Below are positions 5,700 through 33,169 of a stretch of DNA of 64,000 nucleotides, piece after piece. The stretch's first letter is position 1; each line of letters begins with the position of its first letter. The notes below the pieces were generated by a model. That model saw only the letters and a list, made by a program, of their open reading frames with translations, was not told the origin of the DNA and made no database searches. Location: the NCBI RefSeq assembly GCF_046119375.1, contig NW_027362761.1, positions 604,128,001-604,192,000 of the forward strand. The letters run 5' to 3'. The DNA is from Phyllobates terribilis. Lineage: Eukaryota. The position numbers were made by a program, and so were the translations under genes.

Positions 5700-6620
5700 T
5701 AGATCAATGTATCAGCATTTCACTATTTGGTCACATGAATTAATAAAATGGAGATATTTCTGAATCATGCTCATAGATTTCTTTAAGCCCCATGTAAATG
5801 AAATTTTTGCAATAAATCTGCCACATCTGAATATTTTTTTACTCAAGTCATATATCGTCATGACATCTTATTTTTAACGGAGCCATTATCAATATGATAA
5901 ATTCTGACAGATCCTAATGTCTTACAATGGAAGTTGTCAGATTTCTATCTTAGTTGTGATGTTTTATCTTTTTGAAGCAGTGATATATTATTGAAGCATC
6001 CTAACCACTGTAGCCCAGACATTATGGAAAACCACTTTCAGAGCTCCCTATGATCCATTACTAGTGATACTGCTATTATCTGTTCAAAGTCTTCTAAGCA
6101 GCCAGTGATGGCGATATTTCATCTTCTTCTCTGTGTTAGAATCTTAGTGACGTCCTTCACATGTACAGGTATGAGCTGGAACTGAATAATGACATCACCT
6201 AATCCCCGAAACAGATATCCAGGATTAACCGAAAGTAACTAATGGCAAAGCAATTGACTTCCAGCATTCAGGCGCCGGTGATGTGGAAATCAATCTGCTA
6301 GGACTAGTTTACACACTTTAGTAATGGCAATAATTCAACGCTTCTTCTTATTCGGATATAGTTCCTGGTCATGAATGGGGAGCACATTTCATCAGGACAG
6401 GTGGTGATTATTTGATTTTCCAATGAAGTTAAAATCATAGTCAGAGATTCGTAGATTTAATGGGTAATAACTAGGAAGAGGATTTTCAAAAACTGGGACA
6501 AGTCTAGGGTTATGTTTAGACACTTAGCTCCACCTTTGACTTCAGTCTATAGGAACATTATTAAAATACAAATTCACTGAATGCCCAATAAAGTATAAAA
6601 AAACTTGTGAATTGACTCTC

Positions 6621-6674
6621 AACCAATCAGAGAACTCATAGACTTGTGTGTCTCATTTACACCCCTTATATAAA
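6621..6674 (+). promoter_or_regulatory. Kinase gene core promoter (CCAAT box plus TATA box), repeated in every unit
   Basis: AACCAATCAG at 6621-6630 and TATATAAA at 6667-6674, 114 nt upstream of ATG 6788. Units 2-9 have AACCAATTAG with the same TATA box. TSS is not known. Confidence 0.65.
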
Positions 6675-6787
6675 CCAGTCCTTGTATACTCTGGTCAGTG
6701 ATTTTCTCTGCTTTCAGAGACCACGTCTACCTTGAGGACACTTTGACTTGGCTTTTTTCTTTTCCCTTACAACTTCTAAGGGAAACA

Positions 6788-8111
6788 ATGGCCTTCAGCG
6801 TACAAAATGTGGATCTTATCCAGGAAAGACTTGTTTGCATTGCTTCCCAATGTACAGTAGAGATAGATCTACAGGAGAACTTCCATGTGTTACAGAAGCT
6901 TGGGAATGGGGGCTATGGCTCTGTGCTCATGGTACAGGACAAGAAAACAGGTCAGCGTGGTCAATTATCTATCACTATAGATATGGAATTATGTTAAGAT
7001 CATTACAAGATGGTATATCCATGGTTTAGATATAATGGAGGAGTTTTATATATTGTCCATGCATTTAGGTACATGGAAAAATGGGGTAAATCGTCCCAAA
7101 TTTATCAGAAATGTGTATTTGACTTAACAAAATCTTACTTATATCTCATATTAGAATCATAGTTGAAGAATCAATGAGTAAGAGGACATGTTCACAATAA
7201 TTTTGGTAGTTTTATTTAGACTAATGAGAAAAACACTATAAAGACCTATATGTGATACAAGGAATTCTGTTTCGTTTATCAATAGATCAAAAAATGGCAT
7301 TGAAGGTTCTGAACAAGAATAAAACAACTGAATTTGCCTTTCTCATGGAGTTCAGCATGTCCTTCTTCCTCTCCTTCCATCCCAACATCATCGGAACTTA
7401 TGGCATTGCCTTCAAGACATGTGACCACTTTGCCTTTCCTTTGGAGCTGGCGATGGGTGACCTGTCTTCTTTCATTACACCTCATGTAAGTTGAAGTCCC
7501 TGAATTACCCAGAAAACTACAATCCTAATATTCTTCGTTCCTGTAATATTGTCGTGTTGACTTTATTTATTTCTCTATTCCAGAATGGACTCCCAGAAGA
7601 CACAGTAAAGAGATGTGCAGTGCAGCTCTCCAGTGCCCTGGAATTCATAGACAGTAAAGGGTTGGTGCATCTGGATATCAAGCCCAGAAATATCTTGGTG
7701 TTTGAGAAGGATTGCCACTGTATCAAAATTACAGACTTCGGCCTCTCATGTGTCAAAGGGTCAATGATGAAAAAACGGTTTGGCACCATCTCATATATGG
7801 CTCCGGAGATGACACAACTTCCTGACATGGACACTTTGCGAGTGGACTACGCCTTGGATGTATGGGCCTTAAGGATTGTTCTCTACCGCTTGCTCACCGG
7901 AGACTTGCCCTGGCAGTCCGCAGTTTCCACAGACAATGGTTACTGTAGTTTTGTTGAATGGCAAAAATTTGAGAGTGTTGGGCCACCGTCACCATGGAGC
8001 AGATTTCCACGTGGAGTACTAAAGATGTTCAGTGGACTTTTAGCCATAGATTGTAATAAGAGAAGTAAATCGACTGATGTATTGACCTTCTTGGGTGAAT
8101 GTTGGAAATAA
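6788..8111 (+). CDS. SBK (SH3-domain-binding kinase)-like Ser/Thr kinase, copy 1, 296 aa, 3 exons
   Basis: Exons 6788-6950, 7286-7485, 7584-8111 (GT-AG, phases 1 and 0; 891 nt). Motifs GNGGYG, MALK, alphaC E, HLDIKPRN, DFG, GTISYMAPE, DVWAL(R), LTGDLPW, FVEWQ, PSPWSRF resemble SBK1. AATAAA at 8107-8112 and 8119-8124. Confidence 0.92.
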
Positions 8112-8611
8112 ATCTCACAATAAACCAATTTTTTTTAACTGCTCTATATATTGTATTATTGCAATCCTCAAAATGTGTAAATGTATTGTTTTACTATTAT
8201 GCTTTGTCAACTACAAAATAGCACAATTCACAGTGAATTTCAGGAATGAGAAAGTGACTTTTTTCTCATCCCATGTAGATTCAGATTGTCTTTTCCTTTG
8301 ATTTGCAGTACAAATATTTCTACAAAAAATGGGCTTTATTTGAATCTGCTCCAATAAGGAAAAATTATCCATAGCATGCACGTACGCCTTTCCTTAATTT
8401 GCAGTATTGATCTATGAGTTTAATAATTTCACAATTTCATGTGTGGATGTCCTAACTTTAACTTTTTTTATATACATATAGTAAAGCATTAAACAAATCC
8501 TCTAAAACTCTGCATATTTCAACTGCAATATAAGCTAACAAACACAATCTAACATCTTTGTACAAAAAAATATTAATGTTGGTTGAAAAATGTAGTTAGA
8601 TATGCGATGGA

Positions 8612-9254
8612 TATTTACTTGGGGTGAATGTTACCCCCCATGGCCATCCCACTCAAGTGTATAAAAAGTGATATTTTAAAACACAAAATAAAACAAAAGT
8701 TATATGTTTGAGGTTTATTTTCTTTAGGAATTCACAGTTTTTCCATCTAATGGAAATTAATATGCTCTATTACTCTTTAGACATCAGTAATCTTATTTAT
8801 TTATTTTACTCACTTATATAGCGCCATTAATTCCACAGCGCTTCACAGACAATATTGACACTGTCCCCCATTGGGGCTCACAATCTAAATTCCCTATCAG
8901 TATGTCTTAGGAGTGTGGGAAGAAAACAGAGAAGCCAGAAGAAACCCATGCAAACACGGGGAGAACATACAAACTCTTTGCAGATGTTGTCCTTGGTGGG
9001 TTTTGAACCCAGGACCCCAGCGCTGCAAGGCTGCAGTGCTATCCACAGAGCCACTGTGCTTCCCTATTTACTTGGGGTGAATGTCACCCCCATGGCCTTC
9101 CCACTCAAGTGTATATAAAGTGATATTTTTAAAACACAAGATGAAATAAAAGTTATATGTTTGATGTTTATTTTCTTTAGGAACTTCAGGAATTCATAGT
9201 TTCTAAATCTAATAGGCATGAATATGCTTTGTTAATCTTTAGACATCAGTAATC
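8612..9254 (+). repeat. Diverged ~180-bp direct repeat pair (8612-8790, 9065-9254) flanking the SINE; present in every spacer
   Basis: Both copies begin TATTTACTTGGGGTGAATGT.ACCCCC and end TCTTTAGACATCAGTAATC, with substitutions and small indels between them. Confidence 0.9.
8791..9064 (-). mobile_element. tRNA-derived SINE (V-SINE/SINE2-like, L2-type tail), spacer 1
   Basis: Minus strand: A-box TGGCTCTGTGG, B-box GGTTCAAAACC (9009-8999), central GAGTTTGTATGTTCTCCCCGTGTTTGCATGGGTTTC domain, tail stem-loop GCGCTGTGGAATTAATGGCGC, then (TAAA)n. Confidence 0.88.
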
Positions 9255-9792
9255 AGACTGAAATCAATGTGATAAAGGAATCATTCAGAGCTAATCCTGC
9301 ATGTAAGCAAATATCAACATGCAGCATTTCAATGCAAGTTAGGTCAATGCACGTTAGCATCTCCATAGCTGGTAGCTACAACCTCACACCCAATGTATTC
9401 AACCCTCTATTGTCTATTCACATGCAATTACAGGAGTGTCAACTGACCATACACTGAAATTGGGAAGTGAACAGAAACTAAATGACTGGTAAGGTGCAAG
9501 GCACAGGTACTTTAAATGTCTTTACCAGAGTGTCCACTAACTGTAGACAAGTCTACAAGAACATTATTGAAATGCAAATTCACTGAAAGTTCAATAAAGA
9601 ATACAAAACTTGTGAATTGACTCTCAACCAATTAGACAACTCATAGACTTGTGTGCCTCATTTTCACCCCTTATATAAACCAATCCTTGTATTCTCTGGT
9701 CAGTGATTTTCTCTGCTTTCAGGGACGACTTCTACCTTGAGGACACTTTGACTTGGCCTTTTTCTTTTCCCTTACAACTTCTAAGGGAAACA

Positions 9793-11116
9793 ATGGCCTT
9801 CAGCGTACAAAATGTGGATCTTATCCAGGAAAGACTTGTTTGCATTGCTTCCCAATGTACAGTAGAGATAGATCTACAGGAGAACTTCCATGTGTTACAG
9901 AAGCTTGGGAATGGGGGCTATGGCTCTGTGCTCATGGTACAGGACAAGAAAACAGGTCAGTGTGGTCAATTATCTATCACTATAGATATGGAATTATGTT
10001 AAGATCATTACAAGATGGTATATCCATGGTTTAGATATAATGGAGGAGTTTTATATATTGTCCATGCATTTAGGTACATGGAAAAATGGGGTAAATCGTC
10101 CCAAATTTATCAGAAATGTGTATTTGACTTAACAAAATCTTACTTCTATCTCATATTAGAATCATAGTTGAAGAATCAATGAGTAAGAGGACATGTTCAC
10201 AATAATTTTGGTAGTTTTATTTAGACTAATGAGAAAAACACTATAAAGACCTATATGTGATACAAGGAATTCTGTTTCTTTTATCAATAGATCAAAAAAT
10301 GGCATTGAAGGTTCTGAACAAGAATAAAACAACTGAATTTGCCTTTCTCATGGAGTTCAGCATGTCCTTCTTCCTCTCCTTCCATCCCAACATCATCGGA
10401 ACTTATGGCATTGCCTTCAAGACATGTGACCACTTTGCCTTTCCTTTGGAGCTGGCGATGGGTGACCTGTCTTCTCTCATTACACCTCATGTAAGTTGAA
10501 GTCCCTGAATTACCCAGAAAACTACAATCCTAATATTCTTCGTTCCTGTAATATTGTCGTGTTGACTTTATTTATTTCTCTATTCCAGAATGGACTCCCA
10601 GAAGACACAGTAAAGAGATGTGCAGTGCAGCTCTCCAGTGCCCTGGAATTCATAGACAGTAAAGGGTTGGTGCATCTGGATATCAAGCCCAGAAATATCT
10701 TGGTGTTTGATAAGGATTGCCACTGTATCAAAATTACAGACTTCGGCCTCTCATGTGTCAAAGGGTCAATGATGAAAAAACGGTTTGGCACCATCTCATA
10801 TATGGCTCCGGAGATGACACAACTTCCTGACATGGACGCTTTGCGAGTGGACTACGCCTTGGATGTATGGGCCTTAGGGATTGTTCTCTACCGCTTGCTC
10901 ACCGGAGACTTGCCCTGGCAGTCCGCAGTTTCCACAGACAATGGTTACTGTAGTTTTGTTGAATGGCAAAAATTTGAGAGTGTTGGGCCACCGTCACCAT
11001 GGAGCAGATTTCCACGTGGAGTACTAAAGATGTTCAGTGGACTTTTAGCCATAGATTGTAATAAGAGAAGTAAATCGACTGATGTATTGACCTTCTTGGG
11101 TGAATGTTGGAAATAA
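9793..11116 (+). CDS. SBK-like kinase copy 2 (intact)
   Basis: Same exons +3005. Variants L117 D162 T171 M197 D202 A205 G218. Confidence 0.92.
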
Positions 11117-11795
11117 ATCTCACAATAAACCAATTTTTTTTAACTACTCTATATATTGTATTATTGCAATCCTCAAAATGTGTAAATGTATTGTTTTACT
11201 ATTATGCTTTGTCAACTACAAAATAGCACAATTCACAGTGAATTTCAGGAATGAGAAAGTGACTTTTTTCTCATCCCATGTAGATTCAGATTGTCTTTTC
11301 CTTTGATTTGCAGTACAAATATTTCTACAAAAAATGGGCTTTATTTGAATCTGCTCCAATAAGGAAAAATTATCCATAGCATGCACGTACGCCTTTCCTT
11401 AATTTGCAGTATTGATCTATGAGTTTAATAATTTCACAATTTCATGTGTGGATGTCCTAACTTTAACTTTTTTTATATACATATAGTAAAGCATTAAACA
11501 AATCCTCTAAAACTCTGCATATTTCAACTGCAATATAAGCTAACAAACACAATCTAACATCTTTATACAAAAAAATATTAATGTTGGTTGAAAAATGTAG
11601 TTAGATATGCGATGGATATTTACTTGGGGTGAATGTTACCCCCCATGGCCATCCCACTCAAGTGTATAAAAAGTGATATTTTAAAACACAAAATAAAACA
11701 AAAGTTATATGTTTGAGGTTTATTTTCTTTAGGAATTCACAGTTTTTCCATCTAATGGAAATTAATATGCTCTGTTACTCTTTAGACATCAGTAA

Positions 11796-12069
11796 TCTTA
11801 TTTATTTATTTTACTCACTTATATAGCGCCATTAATTCCACAGCGCTTCACAGACAATATTGACACTGTCCCCCATTGGGGCTCACAATCTAAATTCCCT
11901 ATCAGTATGTCTTAGGAGTGTGGGAAGAAAACAGAGAAGCCGGAAGAAACCCATGCAAACACGGGGAGAACATACAAACTCTTTGCAGATGTTGTCCTTG
12001 GTGGGTTTTGAACCCAGGACCCCAGCGCTGCGAGGCTGCAGTGCTATCCACAGAGCCACTGTGCTTCCC
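11796..12069 (-). mobile_element. SINE copy, spacer 2
   Basis: Co-amplified with the unit (+3005). Confidence 0.88.
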
Positions 12070-12797
12070 TATTTACTTGGGGTGAATGTCACCCCCATGG
12101 CCTTCCCACTCAAGTGTATATAAAGTGATATTTTTAAAACACAAGATGAAATAAAAGTTATATGTTTGATGTTTATTTTCTTTAGGAACTTCAGGAATTC
12201 ATAGTTTCTAAATCTAATAGGCATGAATATGCTTTGTTAATCTTTAGACATCAGTAATCAGACTGAAATCAATGTGATAAAGGAATCATTCAGAGCTAAT
12301 CCTGCAAGTAAGCAAATATCAACATGCAGCATTTCAATGCAAGTTAGGTCAATGCACGTTAGCATCTCCATAGCTGGTAGCTACAACCTCACACCCAATG
12401 TATTCAACCCTCTATTGTCTATTCACATGCAATTACAGGAGTGTCAACTGACCATACACTGAAATTGGGAAGTGAACAGAAACTAAATGACTGGTAAGGT
12501 GCAAGGCACAGGTACTTTAAATGTCTTTACCAGAGTGTCCACTAACTGTAGACAAGTCTACAAGAACATTATTGAAATGCAAATTCACTGAAAGTTCAAT
12601 AAAGAATACAAAACTTGTGAATTGACTCTCAACCAATTAGACAACTCATAGACTTGTGTGCCTCATTTTCACCCCTTATATAAACCAATCCTTGTATTCT
12701 CTGGTCAGTGATTTTCTCTGCTTTCAGGGACGACTTCTACCTTGAGGACACTTTGACTTGGCTTTTTTCTTTTCCCTTACAACTTCTAAGGGAAACA

Positions 12798-14121
12798 ATG
12801 GCCTTCAGCGTACAAAATGTGGATCTTATCCAGGAAAGACTTGTTTGCATTGCTTCCCAATGTACAGTAGAGATAGATCTACAGGAGAACTTCCATGTGT
12901 TACAGAAGCTTGGGAATGGGGGCTATGGCTCTGTGCTCATGGTACAGGACAAGAAAACAGGTCAGTGTGGTCAATTATCTATCACTATAGATATGGAATT
13001 ATGTTAAGATCATTACAAGATGGTATATCCATGGTTTAGATATAATGGAGGAGTTTTATATATTGTCCATGCATTTAGGTACATGGAAAAATGGGGTAAA
13101 TCGTCCCAAATTTATCAGAAATGTGTATTTGACTTAACAAAATCTTACTTCTATCTCATATTAGAATCATAGTTGAAGAATCAATGAGTAAGAGGACATG
13201 TTCACAATAATTTTGGTAGTTTTATTTAGACTAATGAGAAAAACACTACAAAGACCTATATGTGATACAAGGAATTCTGTTTCTTTTATCAATAGATCAA
13301 AAAATGGCATTGAAGGTTCTGAACAAGAATAAAACAACTGAATTTGCCTTTCTCATGGAGTTCAGCATGTCCTTCTTCCTCTCCTTCCATCCCAACATCA
13401 TCGGAACTTATGGCATTGCCTTCAAGACATGTGACCACTTTGCCTTTCCTTTGGAGCTGGCGATGGGTGACCTGTCTTCTTTCATTACACCTCATGTAAG
13501 TTGAAGTCCCTGAATTACCCAGAAAACTACAATCCTAATATTCTTCGTTCCTGTAATATTGTCGTGTTGACTTTATTTATTTCTCTATTCCAGAATGGAC
13601 TCCCAGAAGACACAGTAAAGAGATGTGCAGTGCAGCTCTCCAGTGCCCTGGAATTCATAGACAGTAAAGGGTTGGTGCATCTGGATATCAAGCCCAGAAA
13701 TATCTTGGTGTTTGATAAGGATTGCCACTGTATCAAAATTAGAGACTTCGGCCTCTCATGTGTCAAAGGGTCAATGATGAAAAAACGGTTTGGCACCATC
13801 TCATATATGGCTCCGGAGATGACACAACTTCCTGACATGGACGCTTTGCGAGTGGACTACGCCTTGGATGTATGGGCCTTAGGGATTGTTCTCTACCGCT
13901 TGCTCACCGGAGACTTGCCCTGGCAGTCCGCAGTTTCCACAGACAATGGTTACTGTAGTTTTGTTGAATGGCAAAAATTTGAGAGTGTTGGGCCACCGTC
14001 ACCATGGAGCAGATTTCCACGTGGAGTACTAAAGATGTTCAGTGGACTTTTAGCCATAGATTGTAATAAGAGAAGTAAATCGACTGATGTATTGACCTTC
14101 TTGGGTGAATGTTGGAAATAA
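12798..14121 (+). CDS. SBK-like kinase copy 3 (intact)
   Basis: Same exons +6010. F117, T171R (KIRDFG). Confidence 0.92.
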
Positions 14122-15802: not shown

Positions 15803-17126
15803 ATGGCCTTCAGCGTACAAAATGTGGATCTTATCCAGGAAAGACTTGTTTGCATTGCTTCCCAATGTACAGTAGAGATAGATCTACAGGAGAACTTCCA
15901 TGTGTTACAGAAGCTTGGGAATGGGGGCTATGGCTCTGTGCTCATGGTACAGGACAAGAAAACAGGTCAGTGTGGTCAATTATCTATCACTATAGATATG
16001 GAATTATGTTAAGATCATTACAAGATGGTATATCCATGGTTTAGATATAATGGAGGAGTTTTATATATTGTCCATGCATTTAGGTACATGGAAAAATGGG
16101 GTAAATCGTCCCAAATTTATCAGAAATGTGTATTTGACTTAACAAAATCTTACTTCTATCTCATATTAGAATCATAGTTGAAGAATCAATGAGTAAGAGG
16201 ACATGTTCACAATAATTTTGGTAGTTTTATTTAGACTAATGAGAAAAACACTATAAAGACCTATATGTGATACAAGGAATTCTGTTTCTTTTATCAATAG
16301 ATCAAAAAATGGCATTGAAGGTTCTGAACAAGAATAAAACAACTGAATTTGCCTTTCTCATGGAGTTCAGCATGTCCTTCTTCCTCTCCTTCCATCCCAA
16401 CATCATCGGAACTTATGGCATTGCCTTCAAGACATGTGACCACTTTGCCTTTCCTTTGGAGCTGGCGATGGGTGACCTGTCTTCTCTCATTACACCTCAT
16501 GTAAGTTGAAGTCCCTGAATTACCCAGAAAACTACAATCCTAATATTCTTCGTTCCTGTAATATTGTCGTGTTGACTTTATTTATTTCTCTATTCCAGAA
16601 TGGACTCCCAGAAGACACAGTAAAGAGATGTGCAGTGCAGCTCTCCAGTGCCCTGGAATTCATAGACAGTAAAGGGTTGGTGCATCTGGATATCAAGCCC
16701 AGAAATATCTTGGTGTTTGATAAGGATTGCCACTGTATCAAAATTAGAGACTTCGGCCTCTCATGTGTCAAAGGGTCAATGATGAAAAAACGGTTTGGCA
16801 CCATCTCATATATGGCTCCGGAGATGACACAACTTCCTCACATGGACGCTTTGCGAGTGGACTACGCCTTGGATGTATGGGCCTTAGGGATTGTTCTCTA
16901 CCGCTTGCTCACCGGAGACTTGCCCTGGCAGTCCGCAGTTTCCACAGACAATGGTTACTGTAGTTTTGTTGAATGGCAAAAATTTGAGAGTGTTGGGCCA
17001 CCGTCACCATGGAGCAGATTTCCACGTGGAGTACTAAAGATGTTCAGTGGACTTTTAGCCATAGATTGTAATAAGAGAAGTAAATCGACTGATGTATTGA
17101 CCTTCTTGGGTGAATGTTGGAAATAA
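15803..17126 (+). CDS. SBK-like kinase copy 4 (intact)
   Basis: Same exons +9015. T171R, D202H. Confidence 0.92.
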
Positions 17127-18807: not shown

Positions 18808-20131
18808 ATGGCCTTCAGCGTACAAAATGTGGATCTTATCCAGGAAAGACTTGTTTGCATTGCTTCCCAATGTACAGTAGAGATAGATCTACAGTAGAAC
18901 TTCCATGTGTTACAGAAGCTTGGGAATGGGGGCTATGGCTCTGTGCTCATGGTACAGGACAAGAAAACAGGTCAGTGTGGTCAATTATCTATCACTATAG
19001 ATATGGAATTATGTTAAGATCATTACAAGATGGTATATCCATGGTTTAGATATAATGGAGGAGTTTTATATATTGTCCATGCATTTAGGTACATGGAAAA
19101 ATGGGGTAAATCGTCCCAAATTTATCAGAAATGTGTATTTGACTTAACAAAATCTTACTTCTATCTCATATTAGAATCATAGTTGAAGAATCAATGAGTA
19201 AGAGGACATGTTCACAATAATTTTGGTAGTTTTATTTAGACTAATGAGAAAAACACTATAAAGACCTATATGTGATACAAGGAATTCTGTTTCTTTTATC
19301 AATAGATCAAAAAATGGCATTGAAGGTTCTGAACAAGAATAAAACAACTGAATTTGCCTTTCTCATGGAGTTCAGCATGTCCTTCTTCCTCTCCTTCCAT
19401 CCCAACATCATCGGAACTTATGGCATTGCCTTCAAGACATGTGACCACTTTGCCTTTCCTTTGGAGCTGGCGATGGGTGACCTGTCTTCTCTCATTACAC
19501 CTCATGTAAGTTGAAGTCCCTGAATTACCCAGAAAACTACAATCCTAATATTCTTCGTTCCTGTAATATTGTCGTGTTGACTTTATTTATTTCTCTATTC
19601 CAGAATGGACTCCCAGAAGACACAGTAAAGAGATGTGCAGTGCAGCTCTCCAGTGCCCTGGAATTCATAGACAGTAAAGGGTTGGTGCATCTGGATATCA
19701 AGCCCAGAAATATCTTGGTGTTTGATAAGGATTGCCACTGTATCAAAATTAGAGACTTCGGCCTCTCATGTGTCAAAGGGTCAATGATGAAAAAACGGTT
19801 TGGCACCATCTCATATATGGCTCCGGAGATGACACAACTTCCTCACATGGACGCTTTGCGAGTGGACTACGCCTTGGATGTATGGGCCTTAGGGATTGTT
19901 CTCTACCGCTTGCTCACCGGAGACTTGCCCTGGCAGTCCGCAGTTTCCACAGACAATGGTTACTGTAGTTTTGTTGAATGGCAAAAATTTGAGAGTGTTG
20001 GGCCACCGTCACCATGGAGCAGATTTCCACGTGGAGTACTAAAGATGTTCAGTGGACTTTTAGCCATAGATTGTAATAAGAGAAGTAAATCGACTGATGT
20101 ATTGACCTTCTTGGGTGAATGTTGGAAATAA
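18808..20131 (+). pseudogene. SBK-like kinase copy 5, nonsense allele E30*
   Basis: GAG>TAG at 18895-18897 in exon 1 (codon 30). Otherwise like copy 4 (R171, H202). Confidence 0.92.
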
Positions 20132-21812: not shown

Positions 21813-23136
21813 ATGGCCTTCAGCGTACAAAATGTGGATCTTATCCAGGAAAGACTTGTTTGCATTGCTTCCCAATGTACAGTAGAGATAGATCTACAGG
21901 AGAACTTCCATGTGTTACAGAAGCTTGGGAATGGGGGCTATGGCTCTGTGCTCATGGTACAGGACAAGAAAACAGGTCAGTGTGGTCAATTATCTATCAC
22001 TATAGATATGGAATTATGTTAAGATCATTACAAGATGGTATATCCATGGTTTAGATATAATGGAGGAGTTTTATATATTGTCCATGCATTTAGGTACATG
22101 GAAAAATGGGGTAAATCGTCCCAAATTTATCAGAAATGTGTATTTGACTTAACAACATCTTACTTCTATCTCATATTAGAATCATAGTTGAAGAATCAAT
22201 GAGTAAGAGGACATGTTCACAATAATTTTGGTAGTTTTATTTAGACTAATGAGAAAAACACTATAAAGACCTATATGTGATACAAGGAATTCTGTTTCTT
22301 TTATCAATAGATCAAAAAATGGCATTGAAGGTTCTGAACAAGAATAAAACAACTGAATTTGCCTTTCTCATGGAGTTCAGCATGTCCTTCTTCCTCTCCT
22401 TCCATCCCAACATCATCGGAACTTATGGCATTGCCTTCAAGACATGTGACCACTTTGCCTTTCCTTTGGAGCTGGCGATGGGTGACCTGTCTTCTCTCAT
22501 TACACCTCATGTAAGTTGAAGTCCCTGAATTACCCAGAAAACTACAATCCTAATATTCTTCGTTCCTGTAATATTGTCGTGTTGACTTTATTTATTTCTC
22601 TATTCCAGAATGGACTCCCAGAAGACACAGTAAAGAGATGTGCAGTGCAGCTCTCCAGTGCCCTGGAATTCATAGACAGTAAAGGGTTGGTGCATCTGGA
22701 TATCAAGCCCAGAAATATCTTGGTGTTTGATAAGGATTGCCACTGTATCAAAATTACAGACTTCGGCCTCTCATGTGTCAAAGGGTCAATGATGAAAAAA
22801 CGGTTTGGCACCATCTCATATATGGCTCCGGAGAGGACACAACTTCCTGACATGGACGCTTTGCGAGTGGACTACGCCTTGGATGTATGGGCCTTAGGGA
22901 TTGTTCTCTACCGCTTGCTCACCGGAGACTTGCCCTGGCAGTCCGCAGTTTCCACAGACAATGGTTACTGTAGTTTTGTTGAATGGCAAAAATTTGAGAG
23001 TGTTGGGCCACCGTCACCATGGAGCAGATTTCCACGTGGAGTACTAAAGATGTTCAGTGGACTTTTAGCCATAGATTGTAATAAGAGAAGTAAATCGACT
23101 GATGTATTGACCTTCTTGGGTGAATGTTGGAAATAA
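21813..23136 (+). CDS. SBK-like kinase copy 6 (intact)
   Basis: Same exons +15025. M197R (APER). Confidence 0.92.
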
Positions 23137-23815: not shown

Positions 23816-24089
23816 TCTTATTTATTTATTTTACTCACTTATATAGCGCCATTAATTCCACAGCGCTTCACAGACAATATTGACACTGTCCCCCATTGGG
23901 GCTCACAATCTAAATTCCCTATCAGTATGTCTTAGGAGTGTGGGAAGAAAACAGAGAAGCCGGAAGAAACCCATGCAAACACGGGGAGAACATACAAACT
24001 CTTTGCAGATGTTGTCCTTGGTGGGTTTTGAACCCAGGACCCCAGCGCTGCGAGGCTGCAGTGCTATCCACAGAGCCACTGTGCTTCCC
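23816..24089 (-). mobile_element. SINE copy, spacer 6
   Basis: Co-amplified with the unit. Confidence 0.88.
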
Positions 24090-24817
24090 TATTTACTTGG
24101 GGTGAATGTCACCCCCATGGCCTTCCCACTCAAGTGTATATAAAGTGATATTTTTAAAACACAAGATGAAATAAAAGTTATATGTTTGATGTTTATTTTC
24201 TTTAGGAACTTCAGGAATTCATAGTTTCTAAATCTAATAGGCATGAATATGCTTTGTTAATCTTTAGACATCAGTAATCAGACTGAAATCAATGTGATAA
24301 AGGAATCATTCAGAGCTAATCCTGCATGTAAGCAAATATCAACATGCAGCATTTCAATGCAAGTTAGGTCAATGCACGTTAGCATCTCCATAGCTGGTAG
24401 CTACAACCTCACACCCAATGTATTCAACCCTCTATTGTCTATTCACATGCAATTACAGGAGTGTCAACTGACCATACACTGAAATTGGGAAGTGAACAGA
24501 AACTAAATGACTGGTAAGGTGCAAGGCACAGGTACTTTAAATGTCTTTACCAGAGTGTCCACTAACTGTAGACAAGTCTACAAGAACATTATTGAAATGC
24601 AAATTCACTGAAAGTTCAATAAAGAATACAAAACTTGTGAATTGACTCTCAACCAATTAGACAACTCATAGACTTGTGTGCCTCATTTTCACCCCTTATA
24701 TAAACCAATCCTTGTATTCTCTGGTCAGTGATTTTCTCTGCTTTCAGGGACGACTTCTACCTTGAGGACACTTTGACTTGGCCTTTTTCTTTTCCCTTAC
24801 AACTTCTAAGGGAAACA

Positions 24818-26141
24818 ATGGCCTTCAGCGTACAAAATGTGGATCTTATCCAGGAAAGACTTGTTTGCATTGCTTCCCAATGTACAGTAGAGATAGATCT
24901 ACAGGAGAACTTCCATGTGTTACAGAAGCTTGGGAATGGGGGCTATGGCTCTGTGCTCATGGTACAGGACAAGAAAACAGGTCAGTGTGGTCAATTATCT
25001 ATCACTATAGATATGGAATTATGTTAAGATCATTACAAGATGGTATATCCATGGTTTAGATATAATGGAGGAGTTTTATATATTGTCCATGCATTTAGGT
25101 ACATGGAAAAATGGGGTAAATCGTCCCAAATTTATCAGAAATGTGTATTTGACTTAACAACATCTTACTTCTATCTCATATTAGAATCATAGTTGAAGAA
25201 TCAATGAGTAAGAGGACATGTTCACAATAATTTTGGTAGTTTTATTTAGACTAATGAGAAAAACACTATAAAGACCTATATGTGATACAAGGAATTCTGT
25301 TTCTTTTATCAATAGATCAAAAAATGGCATTGAAGGTTCTGAACAAGAATAAAACAACTGAATTTGCCTTTCTCATGGAGTTCAGCATGTCCTTCTTCCT
25401 CTCCTTCCATCCCAACATCATCGGAACTTATGGCATTGCCTTCAAGACATGTGACCACTTTGCCTTTCCTTTGGAGCTGGCGATGGGTGACCTGTCTTCT
25501 CTCATTACACCTCATGTAAGTTGAAGTCCCTGAATTACCCAGAAAACTACAATCCTAATATTCTTCGTTCCAGTAATATTGTCGTGTTGACTTTATTTAT
25601 TTCTCTATTCCAGAATGGACTCCCAGAAGACACAGTAAAGAGATGTGCAGTGCAGCTCTCCAGTGCCCTGGAATTCATAGACAGTAAAGGGTTGGTGCAT
25701 CTGGATATCAAGCCCAGAAATATCTTGGTGTTTGATAAGGATTGCCACTGTATCAAAATTACAGACTTCGGCCTCTCATGTGTCAAAGGGTCAATGATGA
25801 AAAAACGGTTTGGCACCATCTCATATATGGCTCCGGAGATGACACAACTTCCTGACATGGACGCTTTGCGAGTGGACTACGCCTTGGATGTATGGGCCTT
25901 AGGGATTGTTCTCTACCGCTTGCTCACCGGAGACTTGCCCTGGCAGTCCGCAGTTTCCACAGACAATGGTTACTGTAGTTTTGTTGAATGGCAAAAATTT
26001 GAGAGTGTTGGGCCACCGTCACCATGGAGCAGATTTCCACGTGGAGTACTAAAGATGTTCAGTGGACTTTTAGCCATAGATTGTAATAAGAGAAGTAAAT
26101 CGACTGATGTATTGACCTTCTTGGGTGAATGTTGGAAATAA
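24818..26141 (+). CDS. SBK-like kinase copy 7 (intact; protein identical to copy 2)
   Basis: Same exons +18030. Confidence 0.92.
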
Positions 26142-26820
26142 ATCTCACAATAAACCAATTTTTTTTAACTACTCTATATATTGTATTATTGCAATCCTCA
26201 AAATGTGTAAATGTATTGTTTTACTATTATGCTTTGTCAACTACAAAATAGCACAATTCACAGTGAATTTCAGGAATGAGAAAGTGACTTTTTTCTCATC
26301 CCATGTAGATTCAGATTGTCTTTTCCTTTGATTTGCAGTACAAATATTTCTACAAAAAATGGGCTTTATTTGAATCTGCTCCAATAAGGAAAAATTATCC
26401 ATAGCATGCACGTACGCCTTTCCTTAATTTGCAGTATTGATCTATGAGTTTAATAATTTCACAATTTCATGTGTGGATGTCCTAACTTTAACTTTTTTTA
26501 TATACATATAGTAAAGCATTAAACAAATCCTCTAAAACTCTGCATATTTCAACTGCAATATAAGCTAACAAACACAATCTAACATCTTTATACAAAAAAA
26601 TATTAATGTTGGTTGAAAAATGTAGTTAGATATGCGATGGATATTTACTTGGGGTGAATGTTACCCCCCATGGCCATCCCACTCAAGTGTATAAAAAGTG
26701 ATATTTTAAAACACAAAATAAAACAAAAGTTATATGTTTGAGGTTTATTTTCTTTAGGAATTCACAGTTTTTCCATCTAATGGAAATTAATATGCTCTGT
26801 TACTCTTTAGACATCAGTAA

Positions 26821-27094
26821 TCTTATTTATTTATTTTACTCACTTATATAGCGCCATTAATTCCACAGCGCTTCACAGACAATATTGACACTGTCCCCCA
26901 TTGGGGCTCACAATCTAAATTCCCTATCAGTATGTCTTAGGAGTGTGGGAAGAAAACAGAGAAGCCGGAAGAAACCCATGCAAACACGGGGAGAAAATAC
27001 AAACTCTTTGCAGATGTTGTCCTTGGTGGGTTTTGAACCCAGGACCCCAGCGCTGCGAGGCTGCAGTGCTATCCACAGAGCCACTGTGCTTCCC
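26821..27094 (-). mobile_element. SINE copy, spacer 7
   Basis: Co-amplified with the unit. Confidence 0.88.
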
Positions 27095-27822
27095 TATTTA
27101 CTTGGGGTGAATGTCACCCCCATGGCCTTCCCACTCAAGTGTATATAAAGTGATATTTTTAAAACACAAGATGAAATAAAAGTTATATGTTTGATGTTTA
27201 TTTTCTTTAGGAACTTCAGGAATTCATAGTTTCTAAATCTAATAGGCATGAATATGCTTTGTTAATCTTTAGACATCAGTAATCAGACTGAAATCAATGT
27301 GATAAAGGAATCATTCAGAGCTAATCCTGCATGTAAGCAAATATCAACATGCAGCATTTCAATGCAAGTTAGGTCAATGCACGTTAGCATCTCCATAGCT
27401 GGTAGCTACAACCTCACACCCAATGTATTCAACCCTCTATTGTCTATTCACATGCAATTACAGGAGTGTCAACTGACCATACACTGAAATTGGGAAGTGA
27501 ACAGAAACTAAATGACTGGTAAGGTGCAAGGCACAGGTACTTTAAATGTCTTTACCAGAGTGTCCACTAACTGTAGACAAGTCTACAAGAACATTATTGA
27601 AATGCAAATTCACTGAAAGTTCAATAAAGAATACAAAACTTGTGAATTGACTCTCAACCAATTAGACAACTCATAGACTTGTGTGCCTCATTTTCACCCC
27701 TTATATAAACCAATCCTTGTATTCTCTGGTCAGTGATTTTCTCTGCTTTCAGGGACGACTTCTACCTTGAGGACACTTTGACTTGGCCTTTTTCTTTTCC
27801 CTTACAACTTCTAAGGGAAACA

Positions 27823-29146
27823 ATGGCCTTCAGCGTACAAAATGTGGATCTTATCCAGGAAAGACTTGTTTGCATTGCTTCCCAATGTACAGTAGAGATA
27901 GATCTACAGGAGAACTTCCATGTGTTACAGAAGCTTGGGAATGGGGGCTATGGCTCTGTGCTCATGGTACAGGACAAGAAAACAGGTCAGTGTGGTCAAT
28001 TATCTATCACTATAGATATGGAATTATGTTAAGATCATTACAAGATGGTATATCCATGGTTTAGATATAATGGAGGAGTTTTATATATTGTCCATGCATT
28101 TAGGTACATGGAAAAATGGGGTAAATCGTCCCAAATTTATCAGAAATGTGTATTTGACTTAACAAAATCTTACTTCTATCTCATATTAGAATCATAGTTG
28201 AAGAATCAATGAGTAAGAGGACATGTTCACAATAATTTTGGTAGTTTTATTTAGACTAATGAGAAAAACACTATAAAGACCTATATGTGATACAAGGAAT
28301 TCTGTTTCTTTTATCAATAGATCAAAAAATGGCATTGAAGGTTCTGAACAAGAATAAAACAACTGAATTTGCCTTTCTCATGGAGTTCAGCATGTCCTTC
28401 TTCCTCTCCTTCCATCCCAACATCATCGGAACTTATGGCATTGCCTTCAAGACATGTGACCACTTTGCCTTTCCTTTGGAGCTGGCGATGGGTGACCTGT
28501 CTTCTCTCATTACACCTCATGTAAGTTGAAGTCCCTGAATTACCCAGAAAACTACAATCCTAATATTCTTCGTTCCTGTAATATTGTCGTGTTGACTTTA
28601 TTTATTTCTCTATTCCAGAATGGACTCCCAGAAGACACAGTAAAGAGATGTGCAGTGCAGCTCTCCAGTGCCCTGGAATTCATAGACAGTAAAGGGTTGG
28701 TGCATCTGGATATCAAGCCCAGAAATATCTTGGTGTTTGATAAGGATTGCCACTGTATCAAAATTACAGACTTCGGCCTCTCATGTGTCAAAGGGTCAAT
28801 GATGAAAAAACGGTTTGGCACCATCTCATATATGGCTCCGGAGAGGACACAACTTCCTGACATGGACGCTTTGCGAGTGGACTACGCCTTGGATGTATGG
28901 GCCTTAGGGATTGTTCTCTACCGCTTGCTCACCGGAGACTTGCCCTGGCAGTCCGCAGTTTCCACAGACAATGGTTACTGTAGTTTTGTTGAATGGCAAA
29001 AATTTGAGAGTGTTGGGCCACCGTCACCATGGAGCAGATTTCCACGTGGAGTACTAAAGATGTTCAGTGGACTTTTAGCCATAGATTGTAATAAGAGAAG
29101 TAAATCGACTGATGTATTGACCTTCTTGGGTGAATGTTGGAAATAA
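27823..29146 (+). CDS. SBK-like kinase copy 8 (intact; protein identical to copy 6)
   Basis: Same exons +21035. M197R. Confidence 0.92.
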
Positions 29147-29825
29147 ATCTCACAATAAACCAATTTTTTTTAACTGCTCTATATATTGTATTATTGCAAT
29201 CCTCAAAATGTGTAAATGTATTGTTTTACTATTATGCTTTGTCAACTACAAAATAGCACAATTCACAGTGAATTTCAGGAATGAGAAAGTGACTTTTTTC
29301 TCATCCCATGTAGATTCAGATTGTCTTTTCCTTTGATTTGCAGTACAAATATTTCTACAAAAAATGGGCTTTATTTGAATCTGCTCCAATAAGGAAAAAT
29401 TATCCATAGCATGCACGTACGCCTTTCCTTAATTTGCAGTATTGATCTATGAGTTTAATAATTTCACAATTTCATGTGTGGATGTCCTAACTTTAACTTT
29501 TTTTATATACATATAGTAAAGCATTAAACAAATCCTCTAAAACTCTGCATATTTCAACTGCAATATAAGCTAACAAACACAATCTAACATCTTTATACAA
29601 AAAAATATTAATGTTGGTTGAAAAATGTAGTTAGATATGCGATGGATATTTACTTGGGGTGAATGTTACCCCCCATGGCCATCCCACTCAAGTGTATAAA
29701 AAGTGATATTTTAAAACACAAAATAAAACAAAAGTTATATGTTTGAGGTTTATTTTCTTTAGGAATTCACAGTTTTTCCATCTAATGGAAATTAATATGC
29801 TCTGTTACTCTTTAGACATCAGTAA

Positions 29826-30088
29826 TCTTATTTATTTATTTTACTCACTTATATAGCGCCATTAATTCCACAGCGCTTCACAGACAATATTGACACTGTC
29901 CCCCATTGGGGCTCACAATCTAAATTCCCTATCAGTATGTCTTAGGAGTGTGGGAAGAAAACAGAGAAGCCATGCAAACACGGGGAGAAAATACAAACTC
30001 TTTGCAGATGTTGTCCTTGGTGGGTTTTGAACCCAGGACCCCAGCGCTGTGAGGCTGCAGTGCTATCCACAGAGCCACTGTGCTTCCC
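29826..30088 (-). mobile_element. SINE copy, spacer 8, with 11-bp internal deletion
   Basis: GAGAAGC[CGGAAGAAACC]CATGC deletion near 29970 accounts for the 2994-bp last period. Confidence 0.88.
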
Positions 30089-30816
30089 TATTAACTTGGT
30101 GTGAATGTCACCCCCATGGCTTTCCCACTCAAGTGTATATAAAGTGATATTTTTAAAACACAAGATGAAATAAAAGTTATATGTTTGATGTTTATTTTCT
30201 TTAGGAACTTCAGGAATTCATAGTTTCTAAATCTAATAGGCATGAATATGCTTTGTTAATCTTTAGACATCAGTAATCAGACTGAAATCAATGTGATAAA
30301 GGAATCATTCAGAGCTAATCCTGCATGTAAGCAAATATCAACATGCAGCATTTCAATGCAAGTTAGGTCAATGCACGTTAGCATCTCCATAGCTGGTAGC
30401 TACAACCTCACACCCAATGTATTCAACCCTCTATTGTCTATTCACATGCAATTACAGGAGTGTCAACTGACCATACACTGAAATTGGGAAGTGAACAGAA
30501 ACTAAATGACTGGTAAGGTGCAAGGCACAGGTACTTTAAATGTCTTTACCAGAGTGTCCACTAACTGTAGACAAGTCTACAAGAACATTATTGAAATGCA
30601 AATTCACTGAAAGTTCAATAAAGAATACAAAACTTGTGAATTGACTCTCAACCAATTAGACAACTCATAGACTTGTGTGCCTCATTTTCACCCCTTATAT
30701 AAACCAATCCTTGTATTCTCTGGTCAGTGATTTTCTCTGCTTTCAGGGACGACTTCTACCTTGAGGACACTTTGACTTGGCCTTTTTCTTTTCCCTTACA
30801 ACTTCTAAGGGAAACA

Positions 30817-32143
30817 ATGGCCTTCAGCGTACAAAATGTGGATCTTATCCAGGAAAGACTTGTTTGCATTGCTTCCCAATGTACAGTAGAGATAGATCTA
30901 CAGGAGAACTTCCATGTGTTACAGAAGCTTGGGAATGGGGGCTATGGCTCTGTGCTCATGGTACAGGACAAGAAAACAGGTCAGTGTGGTCAATTATCTA
31001 TCACTATAGATATGGAATTATGTTAAGATCATTACAAGATGGTATATCCATGGTTTAGATATAATGGAGGAGTTTTATATATTGTCCATGCATTTAGGTA
31101 CATGGAAAAATGGGGTAAATCGTCCCAAATTTATCAGAAATGTGTATTTGACTTAACAACATCTTACTTCTATCTCATATTAGAATCATAGTTGAAGAAT
31201 CAATGAGTAAGAGGACATGTTCACAATAATTTTGGTAGTTTTATTTAGACTAATGAGAAAAACACTATAAAGACCTATATGTGATACAAGGAATTCTGTT
31301 TCTTTTATCAATAGATCAAAAAATGGCATTGAAGGTTCTGAACAAGAATAAAACAACTGAATTTGCCTTTCTCATGGAGTTCAGCATGTCCTTCTTCCTC
31401 TCCTTCCATCCCAACATCATCGGAACTTATGGCATTGCCTTCAAGACATGTGACCACTTTGCCTTTCCTTTGGAGCTGGCGATGGGTGACCTGTCTTCTC
31501 TCATTACACCTCATGTAAGTTGAAGTCCCTGAATTACCCAGAAAACTACAATCCTAATATTCTTCGTTCCAGTAATATTGTCGTGTTGACTTTATTTATT
31601 TCTCTATTCCAGAATGGACTCCCAGAAGACACAGTAAAGAGATGTGCAGTGCAGCTCTCCAGTGCCCTGGAATTCATAGACAGTAAAGGGTTGGTGCATC
31701 TGGATATCAAGCCCAGAAATATCTTGGTGTTTGATAAGGATTGCCACTGTATCAAAATTACAGACTTCGGCCTCTCATGTGTCAAAGGGTCAATGATGAA
31801 AAAACGGTTTGGCACCATCTCATATATGGCTCCGGAGATGACACAACTTCCTGACATGGACGCTTTGCGAGTGGACTACGCCTTGGATGTATGGGCCTTA
31901 GGGATTGTTCTCTACCGCTTGCTCACTGGAGACTTGCCCTGGCAGTCCGCAGTTTCCACAGACAATGGTTACTGTAGTTTTGTTGAATGGCAAAAATTTG
32001 AGAGTGTTGGGCCACCGTCACCATGGAGCAGATTTCCACGTGGAGTACTAAAGATGTTCAGTGGACTTTTAGCCATAGATTGTAATAAGAGAAGTAAATC
32101 GACTGATGTATTGACCTTCTTGGGTGAATGTTGGAAAGAATAA
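30817..32143 (+). CDS. SBK-like kinase copy 9 (intact, 297 aa, ends CWKE)
   Basis: Exons 30817-30979, 31315-31514, 31613-32143. One extra GAA codon before the stop and one synonymous ACC>ACT. Confidence 0.92.
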
Positions 32144-32181
32144 ATCTCACAATAAACCCATTTTTTTAACTGCTCTATATA

Positions 32182-32925: not shown

Positions 32926-33169
32926 TTCAGCCTAAGCCTTTACTTTTGAAGCCCTACGGCTTCAGGCCTCTACTTTTGAAGCCCTGCAGCTGCAGGCCTC
33001 TACGGCTTCAGGCCTCTACTTTTGCAGCCCTAGGGCTGCAAAATGCAAATCTAACTGAAGCCCTCCGGCTTCAAAGGTTCTCTCTGTGCAGCCGTAGGGC
33101 TGCACAATGCATCTCTATGGGACATCTGTGTATGACCGATATTTCTTTTCCTCAAACACAAATATTGAG

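What the first reader, a model, noticed from the sequence alone, without database searches (positions are those of the whole stretch)
6545..32181. Nine-copy, near-identical tandem amplicon of a complete 3-exon SBK-like kinase gene
Seen: a self-contained ~3.0-kb cassette (CCAAT, TATA, three exons, two AATAAA, spacer with SINE) is repeated head-to-tail with exact 3005-bp periodicity and only a few differences per unit. Eight of nine ORFs are intact. Introns and spacers are as identical as exons, so the amplification or homogenisation is very recent. Established: SBK kinases are normally low-copy, and recent ampliconic kinase arrays elsewhere (mouse Smok/Tcr on t haplotypes) are germline genes tied to transmission distortion. 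Inference: this may be a dosage-selected, copy-number-variable kinase system (germline conflict, immunity or stress). Nothing in the sequence reveals its function.
Basis: partly seen in the sequence, partly recalled or inferred. Interest (0 to 1): 0.85.

Follow-up and report, generated by a model that had tools for sequence, protein, structure and literature searches.

The report
Tandem array of frog SBK1-like kinases
The golden poison frog carries nine head-to-tail, almost identical copies of a small SBK1-like protein kinase gene; the array is real and young, but the same amphibian kinase subfamily has also duplicated recently in tandem in two other frogs examined, and nothing here points to a special function.

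Summary
Window 6600-32181 holds eight full units (seven of 3005 bp, one of 2994 bp) and a truncated ninth. Each carries a complete three-exon, 296-aa kinase gene; eight ORFs are intact and copy 5 has a nonsense codon. The genome is Phyllobates terribilis, where NCBI already annotates nine 'SBK1-like' genes. Contigs from four DNA samples cross the unit-to-unit junction and hold the unit at several-fold the depth of the lowest-depth flank, so this is not an assembly artefact. RNA contigs show intron 2 spliced as predicted, at low depth, tissue unknown.

The protein belongs to the SBK family (41-43% identical to SBK1), in a faster-evolving clade found only in frogs and salamanders, mostly non-RD (HLD/HMD). 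That clade forms species-specific clusters. Mixophyes fleayi has its own 4809-bp array (99.6-99.8% identical) and Eleutherodactylus coqui a 98.7% pair. 'SBK kinases are low-copy' therefore does not hold for amphibians.

Long-term dN/dS is about 0.2, but changes within the array look neutral (8 non-synonymous, 1 synonymous). The best reading is a young array built by unequal crossing-over, with redundant, drifting copies. No evidence supports meiotic drive or immunity. An earlier scan note reports another SBK1-like array 13.1 Mb away (untested).

The parts
6600..32181 (+). Whole tandem array: 8 full units (7 x 3005 bp, unit 8 = 2994 bp) plus a truncated ninth of 1553 bp
6788..8111 (+). Copy 1 gene (ATG to stop, 3 exons, 296 aa). 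It is the most divergent copy, with L117F, D162E, A205T and G218R; G218 is a nearly invariant position in the family
9793..11116 (+). Copy 2 gene, encoding the consensus protein. Exons 9793-9955, 10291-10490, 10589-11116. Promoter elements: CCAAT 9628-9632, TATATAAA 9672-9679, CCAAT 9680-9684. Poly(A) signals: AATAAA 11112-11117 and 11124-11129
12798..14121 (+). Copy 3 gene (L117F, T171R). Intron 2 (13496-13593) is seen spliced out in RNA contigs
15803..17126 (+). Copy 4 gene (T171R, D202H)
18808..20131 (+). Copy 5 gene, broken by the nonsense codon E30* at 18895-18897. That is its only difference from unit 4 across the whole unit
21813..23136 (+). Copy 6 gene (M197R)
24818..26141 (+). Copy 7 gene, encoding the consensus protein
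27823..29146 (+). Copy 8 gene (M197R). Its unit has an 11-bp deletion in the SINE-like repeat near 29970
30817..32143 (+). Copy 9 gene (297 aa, in-frame AAG adds a C-terminal E). The unit is cut 38 bp after the stop, at a TA
11800..12070 (-). SINE-like, very high-copy short repeat, present once per full unit and flanked by two roughly 190-bp direct repeats that are 86% alike (unit positions 2013-2193 and 2466-2655). The minus strand is a guess from a B-box-like motif read by eye
2366..2899 (+). Diverged homologue of the inter-unit spacer (94.6% to unit positions 2469-2949) that lacks the SINE-like element. It is the old upstream flank or a decayed edge unit
2900..6543 (.). 3644-bp insertion of transposon material (mariner-like transposase ORFs) that splits the old spacer exactly between unit positions 2949 and 2951
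6544..6599 (+). Continuation of the old spacer (85% identity to unit positions 2951-3004), leading into unit 1
32182..33000 (.). Tc1/mariner-like element that ends the array. It has a terminal repeat at a TA, a transposase ORF at 32507-32848 on the minus strand, and DNA word depth of 1e5 or more

Best explanation
This is a real, young tandem amplification in Phyllobates terribilis of one member of an SBK1-like kinase subfamily found only in frogs and salamanders.

Shown:
- There are nine same-strand gene copies, each with its own CCAAT/TATA promoter and poly(A) signals.
- The units are 99.2-99.97% alike in coding and non-coding DNA equally.
- The edge copy is the most divergent.
- Units 6/8 and 7/9 pair up.
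- A 94.6%-identical relic of the spacer, without the SINE-like element, lies upstream.

Inferred: the array grew and is kept uniform by unequal crossing-over or gene conversion from one master unit that had already acquired the SINE-like element. One step duplicated two units at once.

The protein is a kinase domain and nothing else. It keeps the Gly-rich loop, the catalytic Lys, the catalytic Asp in a non-RD HLD motif, DFG and APE. It has lost the 80-140-residue tail that most other frog members carry. It has a charge-reversed residue in the catalytic loop, KPRN instead of KPEN.

Inferred: it is a catalytically competent enzyme, probably independent of activation-loop phosphorylation, whose output is set mainly by its abundance, so copy number scales dose.

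The family has been under moderate purifying selection in the long run (dN/dS about 0.2). The recent copies are redundant and drift: 8 non-synonymous to 1 synonymous change, one nonsense codon, and radical changes at conserved positions. The array is therefore in a birth-and-death cycle, not a set of nine individually maintained genes. The cellular role is unknown.
For: Structure of the array:
- Searches give the units, gene models and difference matrix. Unit 1 differs from the others by 23-26 SNPs; units 2-7 differ among themselves by 1-8, and unit 8 from them by 6-12. Units 4 and 5 differ by 1, and units 6 and 8 by 1 in the gene half.
- the old spacer is split by a 3644-bp insertion exactly between unit positions 2949 and 2951. 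The array ends at a TA against a Tc1-like terminal repeat.

Reality of the array:
- contigs from four DNA samples bridge 30628/30629.
- Unit word depth is about 110 in X8, against 9-12 for the lowest-depth flank contigs.
- In X10 and X14 the ratio is about 3.7.
- X14 carries G at unit position 1133 (T171R) as its majority base.

Identity and family:
- Pkinase; nine NCBI 'SBK1-like' accessions; best matches SBK1, then SBK2/3, then Drosophila meng-po.
- a frog-plus-salamander clade (SH-aLRT 100) with species-specific clusters, sister to a slow single-copy clade.
- that sister gene is at least 90% identical across Hyloidea, whereas this gene is 72-79% identical to its hyloid homologues.

Selection:
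- dN/dS is 0.20-0.22 against E. coqui, Mixophyes and Ascaphus.
- P = 0.006 against omega 0.2, and P = 0.40 against neutrality.

Parallels in other frogs:
- the Mixophyes 4809-bp array is 99.6-99.8% alike, and one copy is frameshifted.
- the E. coqui pair is 98.7% alike.

Motifs: one search shows HLD/HMD in the clade, KPRN only in Phyllobates, and tail length 0.

Expression: one search shows the GT..AG joint 13495>13594 in three RNA libraries.
Against: - Expression evidence is thin. Word depth is only 2-6, the tissue is unknown, and exon 1 was never seen in RNA contigs.
- The X2/X3 contigs are only about 97% alike and carry an extra A in an A6 run, so they come from another paralogue or allele.
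- One X16 contig joins exon 2 to 54 letters that lie nowhere on the unit.
- Kinase activity, independence from activation-loop phosphorylation and dose dependence are inferred from motifs only.
- The depth-based copy numbers rest on one roughly 200-bp flank stretch whose single-copy status is unverified, and the tool itself warns that contig depth is not a copy number.
- With nine coding changes, neutrality cannot be told apart from diversifying selection.
Confidence: 0.7

Rival explanations
1. The array is a neutral copy-number variant of a gene that is becoming dispensable in dendrobatid frogs. Under this view the copies are on their way to being pseudogenes and the amplification has no functional meaning.
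For: - Changes within the array fit neutrality, with one nonsense codon.
- G218R, T171R and M197R hit conserved positions, and only copies 2, 7 and 9 encode the consensus protein.
- The C-terminal tail is lost.
- RNA depth is low, and a frameshifted relative is transcribed.
- No member of this clade was returned for Dendrobates tinctorius or Ranitomeya, although their sister-clade proteins are in the database.
Against: - Eight of nine ORFs are intact, with every catalytic motif and all splice sites.
- dN/dS is 0.20 on the path to E. coqui.
- The tail-less 296-aa form is shared with Anomaloglossus, so it has persisted since the two lineages split.
- The time since amplification is too short for decay to show either way.
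Confidence: 0.2
2. The array is driven by genetic conflict: either a germline or meiotic-drive system like mouse Smok/Tcr, or an arms race with a pathogen in which a non-RD kinase acts in innate immunity. Repeated amplification in different frogs would then be the signature of recurrent selection.
For: - Independent recent tandem duplicates occur in three frog lineages.
- The clade evolves much faster than its single-copy sister.
- The non-RD motif is, from recalled literature, enriched among innate-immune kinases.
- There is a unique charge reversal at a substrate-contact position, KPRN.
- Non-synonymous changes are in excess, 8 to 1.
Against: - No datum exists on germline or immune expression, on linkage to an inversion, or on segregation.
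- The protein is not related to Smok beyond the kinase fold.
- The 8:1 ratio does not differ from neutrality (P = 0.40).
- Tandem arrays amplify by unequal crossing-over without any selection.
Confidence: 0.07
3. The array is an assembly artefact: one or two real copies were inflated into nine by the assembler.
For: Near-identical 3-kb repeats over 25.6 kb are hard to assemble, and no single long read was inspected here.
Against: - Each unit has its own combination of SNPs.
- Word depth of the unit is about ten times that of the lowest-depth flank contigs in the sample most likely to be the assembled one, and several-fold in two others.
- Contigs from four samples cross the unit-to-unit junction.
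Confidence: 0.03

Closest known systems
[quoted passage not shown]
   Same: The kinase fold and an N-terminal helix align over residues 5-296 with TM 0.92-0.94. Identity is 41-43% to SBK1, 35-36% to SBK2/3 and 33% to meng-po. Residues conserved across these proteins are listed.
   Different: The window protein has HLD instead of HRD and no C-terminal tail at all. It belongs to a multi-copy, faster-evolving clade found only in frogs and salamanders. SBK1-3 are single genes; papers found here place SBK3 and SBK2 in heart, and SBK1 in brain is recalled.
Tandem SBK1-like array of Mixophyes fleayi (locus L001, GCA_038048845.1)
   Same: It is the homologous gene (64% aa identity) with the same three-exon layout of the kinase domain. 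The units are head-to-tail and 99.6-99.8% alike, one copy is broken by a frameshift, and the other coding differences are non-synonymous.
   Different: The unit is 4809 bp, the protein keeps its 92-residue tail and has HMD, and the non-coding DNA cannot be aligned with the Phyllobates unit. The amplification is therefore independent.
Mouse Smok/Tcr kinase amplicons of the t haplotype
   Same: Both are recently multiplied Ser/Thr kinase genes.
   Different: Smok belongs to another kinase family (Smok Y is match 27 at 28% identity). The defining traits of Smok/Tcr (testis expression, location in inversions, transmission distortion) are untested here.
Large lineage-specific tandem kinase families such as the zebrafish Pim-related (pimr) genes (recalled), and the miniature MAST-like kinase arrays noted elsewhere in this genome by the scan (unchecked)
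   Same: These are compact, kinase-domain-only genes multiplied in tandem in one lineage, with many near-identical copies and no known role.
   Different: They are different kinase families, and no comparison was run here.

Membership tests
SBK (NKF1) protein kinase family | Eukaryotic protein kinase domain with the catalytic residues (Gly-rich loop, VAIK Lys, catalytic Asp and Asn, DFG, APE) | tested here: met
   Pfam PF00069 E = 5.9e-48 over residues 32-288. The motifs GNGGYG, MALK, HLDIKPRN, DFG and APE are present. The AlphaFold2 model has pLDDT 91.
SBK (NKF1) protein kinase family | Closest reviewed relatives are SBK1-3, ahead of any other kinase group | tested here: met
   Ranks 1-9 are SBK1/2/3 (35-43% identity), rank 10 is meng-po, and Chk1 follows at 25-29%. 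The tree places the protein with the Latimeria and Xenopus SBK sequences.
SBK (NKF1) protein kinase family | C-terminal extension beyond the kinase domain (the proline-rich SH3-binding tail that named SBK1; recalled) | tested here: not met
   The ORF ends at the last residue of the kinase domain in all copies. Most other frog members carry tails of about 80-140 residues (up to 186), and Anomaloglossus also lacks one.
SBK (NKF1) protein kinase family | HRD catalytic-loop motif (RD kinase) | tested here: not met
   All nine copies have HLD. The expanded frog clade has HLD/HMD, except Ascaphus and Lissotriton (HRD). The single-copy sister clade is always HRD.
Tandem gene array under concerted evolution / recent unequal crossing-over | Head-to-tail units on one strand, with non-coding DNA as alike as coding DNA | tested here: met
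   SNP-site density is 1.0% in coding sequence, 1.4% in introns and 1.4% in spacer.
Tandem gene array under concerted evolution / recent unequal crossing-over | Edge units more divergent than interior units, with a decayed relic beyond the edge | tested here: met
   Unit 1 differs from the others by 23-26 SNPs, against 1-8 among units 2-7 and 6-12 between unit 8 and units 2-7. The upstream spacer relic is 94.6% and 85% identical.
Tandem gene array under concerted evolution / recent unequal crossing-over | Paralogues cluster by species, not by orthology | tested here: met
   One search shows the Ascaphus, Dendropsophus, E. coqui, Rhinoderma, Hyla and Leptobrachium clusters. All Phyllobates copies fall in a single 90% cluster.
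Tandem gene array under concerted evolution / recent unequal crossing-over | Copy number or unit make-up varies between individuals | tested here: inconclusive
   The depth ratio of unit to flank is about 10 in X8 against about 3.7 in X10 and X14, and the majority base at unit position 1133 differs in X14. Contig depth is a poor measure of copy number.
Smok/Tcr-type transmission distorter | Homology to the Smok/MARK-related kinases | tested here: not met
   Smok Y is rank 27 at 28% identity, far behind the SBK proteins.
Smok/Tcr-type transmission distorter | Post-meiotic testis expression, linkage to a non-recombining haplotype, and distorted segregation | not testable with these tools
   RNA runs are coded without tissue. 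No cross or haplotype data are available.

The most novel reading that the evidence does not exclude
Frogs and salamanders have a non-RD, fast-evolving offshoot of the SBK kinases that is repeatedly re-amplified into near-identical tandem arrays in unrelated frog lineages (Phyllobates, Mixophyes, Eleutherodactylus). Under this reading selection, not drift, favours high or variable dosage, for example in an arms race with a pathogen or in germline conflict. The Phyllobates-specific charge reversal in the catalytic loop (KPEN to KPRN) would mark a change of substrate.
Probability: 0.2. Interest if true: 0.65.

Novelty: new member of a known kind. Interest (0 to 1): 0.4.

Why it matters
The array itself is an ordinary product of unequal crossing-over and is already annotated as nine genes. 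The comparative pattern is worth keeping. An undescribed SBK subfamily found only in frogs and salamanders has mostly lost the HRD arginine and evolves far faster than its single-copy sister. It has independent recent tandem duplicates in all three frog genomes whose loci were examined.

SBK kinases are among the least understood human kinases. A lineage in which they are multiplied, stripped to the bare kinase domain and altered at a substrate-contact residue could offer a natural handle on their substrates. The array is also a convenient locus for measuring rates of unequal crossing-over and gene conversion in a giant, transposon-rich genome.

Tried and rejected
- SINE head: Rfam (E-value mode) and ARAGORN on the unit found no tRNA-like head or any RNA family in the SINE-like repeat. 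It is called SINE-like from its size and copy depth only.
- Rest of unit 9: a search with up to 3 mismatches for the remainder beyond the Tc1-like element found nothing in the window.
- Promoters: aligning 300 bp upstream of the ATG in Phyllobates, E. coqui, Mixophyes and Ascaphus showed no conserved block beyond the start codon context, so no regulatory inference was possible.
- Literature: searches on SBK1-like, SBK1 with amphibian or Xenopus, and SBK1/2/3 found no paper on an amphibian SBK expansion. One search was badly framed and useless.
- Genome paper: the draft P. terribilis genome paper (PMC12208295) concerns another, fragmented assembly and does not mention kinases.
- NCBI's upstream exon: NCBI's 325-aa models add an upstream 'MDIYLG' exon from the preceding spacer. 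No RNA contig showed that joint, and other frogs' proteins start at the MA(S/F)S methionine, so I rejected the extension.
- Second array: the SBK1-like array 13.1 Mb away could not be read.
- Link to poison-frog toxin biology: considered and rejected, because non-toxic Anomaloglossus shares the tail-less gene and Mixophyes has its own array.


Full report
**1. What is in the sequence**

Counting distances between repeated 25-mers gives one dominant period: 3005 bp (19,237 words), with a second at 2994 bp (1,966 words). BLASTN of one unit against the window resolves eight full units, starting at 6600, 9605, 12610, 15615, 18620, 21625, 24630 and 27635. A ninth copy at 30629-32181 stops at unit position 1551. 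Identity to unit 2 is 99.24% for unit 1, 99.80-99.90% for units 3-7, 99.37% for unit 8 and 99.42% for copy 9. Unit 8 is 11 bp shorter.

**2. The gene**

Each unit carries a three-exon gene at unit positions 189-351, 687-886 and 985-1512, with GT/AG at both introns in all nine copies. It encodes 296 residues. Copy 5 has a G>T change that makes codon 30 a stop (18895-18897). Copy 9 has an in-frame AAG insertion that adds one C-terminal Glu.

Upstream of the ATG lie CCAAT, TATATAAA and a second CCAAT (9628-9684 in unit 2). Two AATAAA signals sit at and just after the stop codon (11112-11129).

SNP-site density is 9/891 in coding sequence, 6/433 in introns and 23/1681 elsewhere, so exons are no better conserved than the rest.

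**3. Whose genome, and is it annotated**

The protein is identical to 'serine/threonine-protein kinase SBK1-like' of Phyllobates terribilis, on a 1.24-Gb chromosome record of assembly GCA_046119375.1. Seven distinct sequences under nine accessions match the nine copies in order. NCBI's gene calls show nine consecutive kinase genes. No other gene lies within 10 kb upstream of the first gene model or downstream of the last.

NCBI's 325-aa models prepend a short exon from the preceding spacer. No RNA contig supports that exon, and homologues start at the methionine used here.

**4. Is the array real**

Contigs from four DNA samples in two studies were laid on 29200-35199. In all four, a contig crosses the unit-to-unit junction at 30628/30629.

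Word depth over the unique parts of the unit, by run:

| Run | Unit depth | Lowest-depth flank contigs (33850-34090) | Ratio |
|---|---|---|---|
| X8 | about 110 | 9-12 | about 10 |
| X10 | about 63 | 16.8 | about 3.7 |
| X12 | about 23 | none | not available |
| X14 | about 32 | 8-10 | about 3.7 |

These ratios are rough. The single-copy status of that flank stretch is unverified, and the tool warns against reading contig depth as copy number. They do exclude a single-copy locus, and they hint at copy-number differences between animals.

Array make-up also differs between animals. In X14 the majority base at unit position 1133 is the G that encodes T171R, which only copies 3-5 carry in the assembly.

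**5. How the array was built**

- *Edge against interior.* Unit 1 differs from every other unit by 23-26 SNPs. Units 2-7 differ among themselves by 1-8, and unit 8 differs from them by 6-12.
- *Very recent steps.* Units 4 and 5 differ only by the nonsense mutation. Units 6 and 8 differ by one SNP in the gene half and units 7 and 9 by three, more alike than the adjacent pair 8/9 (five) and no less alike than 6/7 (three). This fits a two-unit duplication step.
- *Left flank.* Window 2417-2899 is 94.6% identical to unit positions 2469-2949, and 6544-6597 is 85% identical to 2951-3004. The 3644 bp between them is inserted transposon material that splits the old spacer exactly at 2949/2951.
- *Order of events.* This relic lacks the SINE-like element and one of the two 190-bp direct repeats that every unit carries. 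The present units therefore descend from one master unit that acquired them after diverging from the relic.
- *Right end.* The array stops at a TA against the terminal repeat of a Tc1/mariner-like element. The rest of unit 9 is not in the window.

Together these are the marks of unequal crossing-over or gene conversion with poorly homogenised edges.

**6. What the protein is**

- Pfam finds a protein kinase domain (E = 5.9e-48).
- No SBK structure is solved; the best PDB sequence match is Chk1.
- An AlphaFold2 model built from 28 family members has pLDDT 91.
- Its best reviewed matches are SBK1 of zebrafish, mouse, human and rat (41-43% identity, TM 0.93-0.94). SBK2 and SBK3 (35-36%) and Drosophila meng-po (33%) follow.
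- All catalytic motifs are present, but the HRD arginine is replaced (HLD), and the ORF ends with the kinase domain.

**7. The family**

A tree of 81 homologues places the gene in a clade of frogs plus two salamanders (SH-aLRT 100, stem 0.5 changes per site).

Within that clade, sequences cluster by species or genus:

| Taxon | Proteins in the tree |
|---|---|
| Ascaphus | 8 |
| Dendropsophus | 5 |
| E. coqui | 4 |
| Rana temporaria | 10 |
| Lithobates | 7 |

- *Sister clade.* The sister clade has one sequence per species in every species sampled and short branches. It is always HRD and at least 90% identical across hyloid frogs including P. terribilis. The array protein, by contrast, is only 72-79% identical to its hyloid homologues.
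- *Catalytic-loop motifs.* In the expanded clade the arginine was lost (HLD/HMD) in all but Ascaphus and Lissotriton. KPRN in place of KPEN occurs only in Phyllobates.
- *C-terminal tail.* The tail is missing in both Phyllobates and Anomaloglossus.

Recent tandem duplicates are not peculiar to Phyllobates:

- Mixophyes fleayi has a 4809-bp array, 99.6-99.8% alike, with one frameshifted copy.
- E. coqui has two copies 15.85 kb apart and 98.7% alike.
- Anomaloglossus has at least two neighbouring copies.
- The non-coding DNA of these arrays does not align, so the amplifications are independent.

**8. Selection**

Nei-Gojobori dN/dS between the Phyllobates gene and its E. coqui, Mixophyes and Ascaphus homologues is 0.20-0.22. 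That is purifying selection, but mild for a kinase (by general experience; not tested here).

Among the nine copies there are eight non-synonymous sites (one a nonsense codon) and one synonymous site. This fits neutrality (P = 0.40) and is unlikely under omega = 0.2 (P = 0.006).

Several of the changes hit conserved positions:

- G218R in copy 1
- T171R, next to DFG, in copies 3-5
- M197R, after APE, in copies 6 and 8

Only copies 2, 7 and 9 encode the consensus protein.

**9. Expression**

Contigs of three RNA-type libraries contain the predicted exon 2-exon 3 joint (13495>13594, GT..AG) at word depth 2-6. The X16 contigs match the array (0-1 mismatch per piece).

The X2 and X3 contigs are about 97% alike, with a 3-nt deletion in exon 2 and an extra A in an A6 run of exon 3. 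They come from another paralogue or allele. Exon 1 was not seen. One X16 contig continues upstream of exon 2 into 54 letters that lie nowhere on the unit. The tissue of every run is hidden.

**10. Reading**

The array is a young product of unequal crossing-over in a kinase subfamily that has duplicated recently in several frogs. Its copies are redundant and drifting. The encoded enzyme is probably active and set by dose, but that is inference from motifs.

An earlier scan note (s1-234829, unchecked) reports a further SBK1-like array 13.1 Mb downstream on the same chromosome. It may be the source of the 97% transcripts.

No paper on an amphibian SBK expansion was found in the searched library.

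Noticed in passing
window 32182-33000: A Tc1/mariner-like element with extreme copy depth (word depth 1e5-6e5 in all four DNA runs) abuts the array at a TA. It carries a transposase ORF at 32507-32848 on the minus strand.
   Followed up: partly
window 1319-1705 and 34390-35684: ORFs with reverse-transcriptase and GIY-YIG-like motifs, which look like Penelope-type retroelements, lie on both sides of the array. This was read from the translations only.
   Followed up: no
window 42190-43800: A run of overlapping ORFs resembles a decayed hAT-type transposase in a GC-richer stretch (51% GC). Not scanned against Pfam.
   Followed up: no
window 54007-55119 and 57973-59181: GC-rich minisatellites: a 34-bp unit x 11, a 50/93-bp unit x 13/6, and a 40-bp unit x 30 at 93% identity. 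The last one creates long artefactual ORFs.
   Followed up: no
window 13294-13390 (RNA run X16): A 151-nt RNA contig matches exon 2 exactly from its acceptor, but its 54 upstream letters lie nowhere on the 3005-bp unit. The first exon used in vivo may not be the predicted one.
   Followed up: no
RNA runs X2 and X3 on window 13331-14076: Spliced transcripts about 97% identical to the array carry a 3-nt deletion in exon 2 and an extra A in the A6 run of exon 3 (a frameshift). An unannotated paralogue or divergent allele is transcribed.
   Followed up: no
protein database: No member of the expanded SBK1-like clade was returned for Dendrobates tinctorius, Ranitomeya imitator or R. variabilis, although their conserved sister-clade proteins are present. 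This may mean loss or pseudogenisation in those dendrobatids.
   Followed up: no
L002 (E. coqui) 1-35038: The two E. coqui SBK1-like genes lie inside the span of a larger called gene (697-aa product, no Pfam hit) on the same strand.
   Followed up: no
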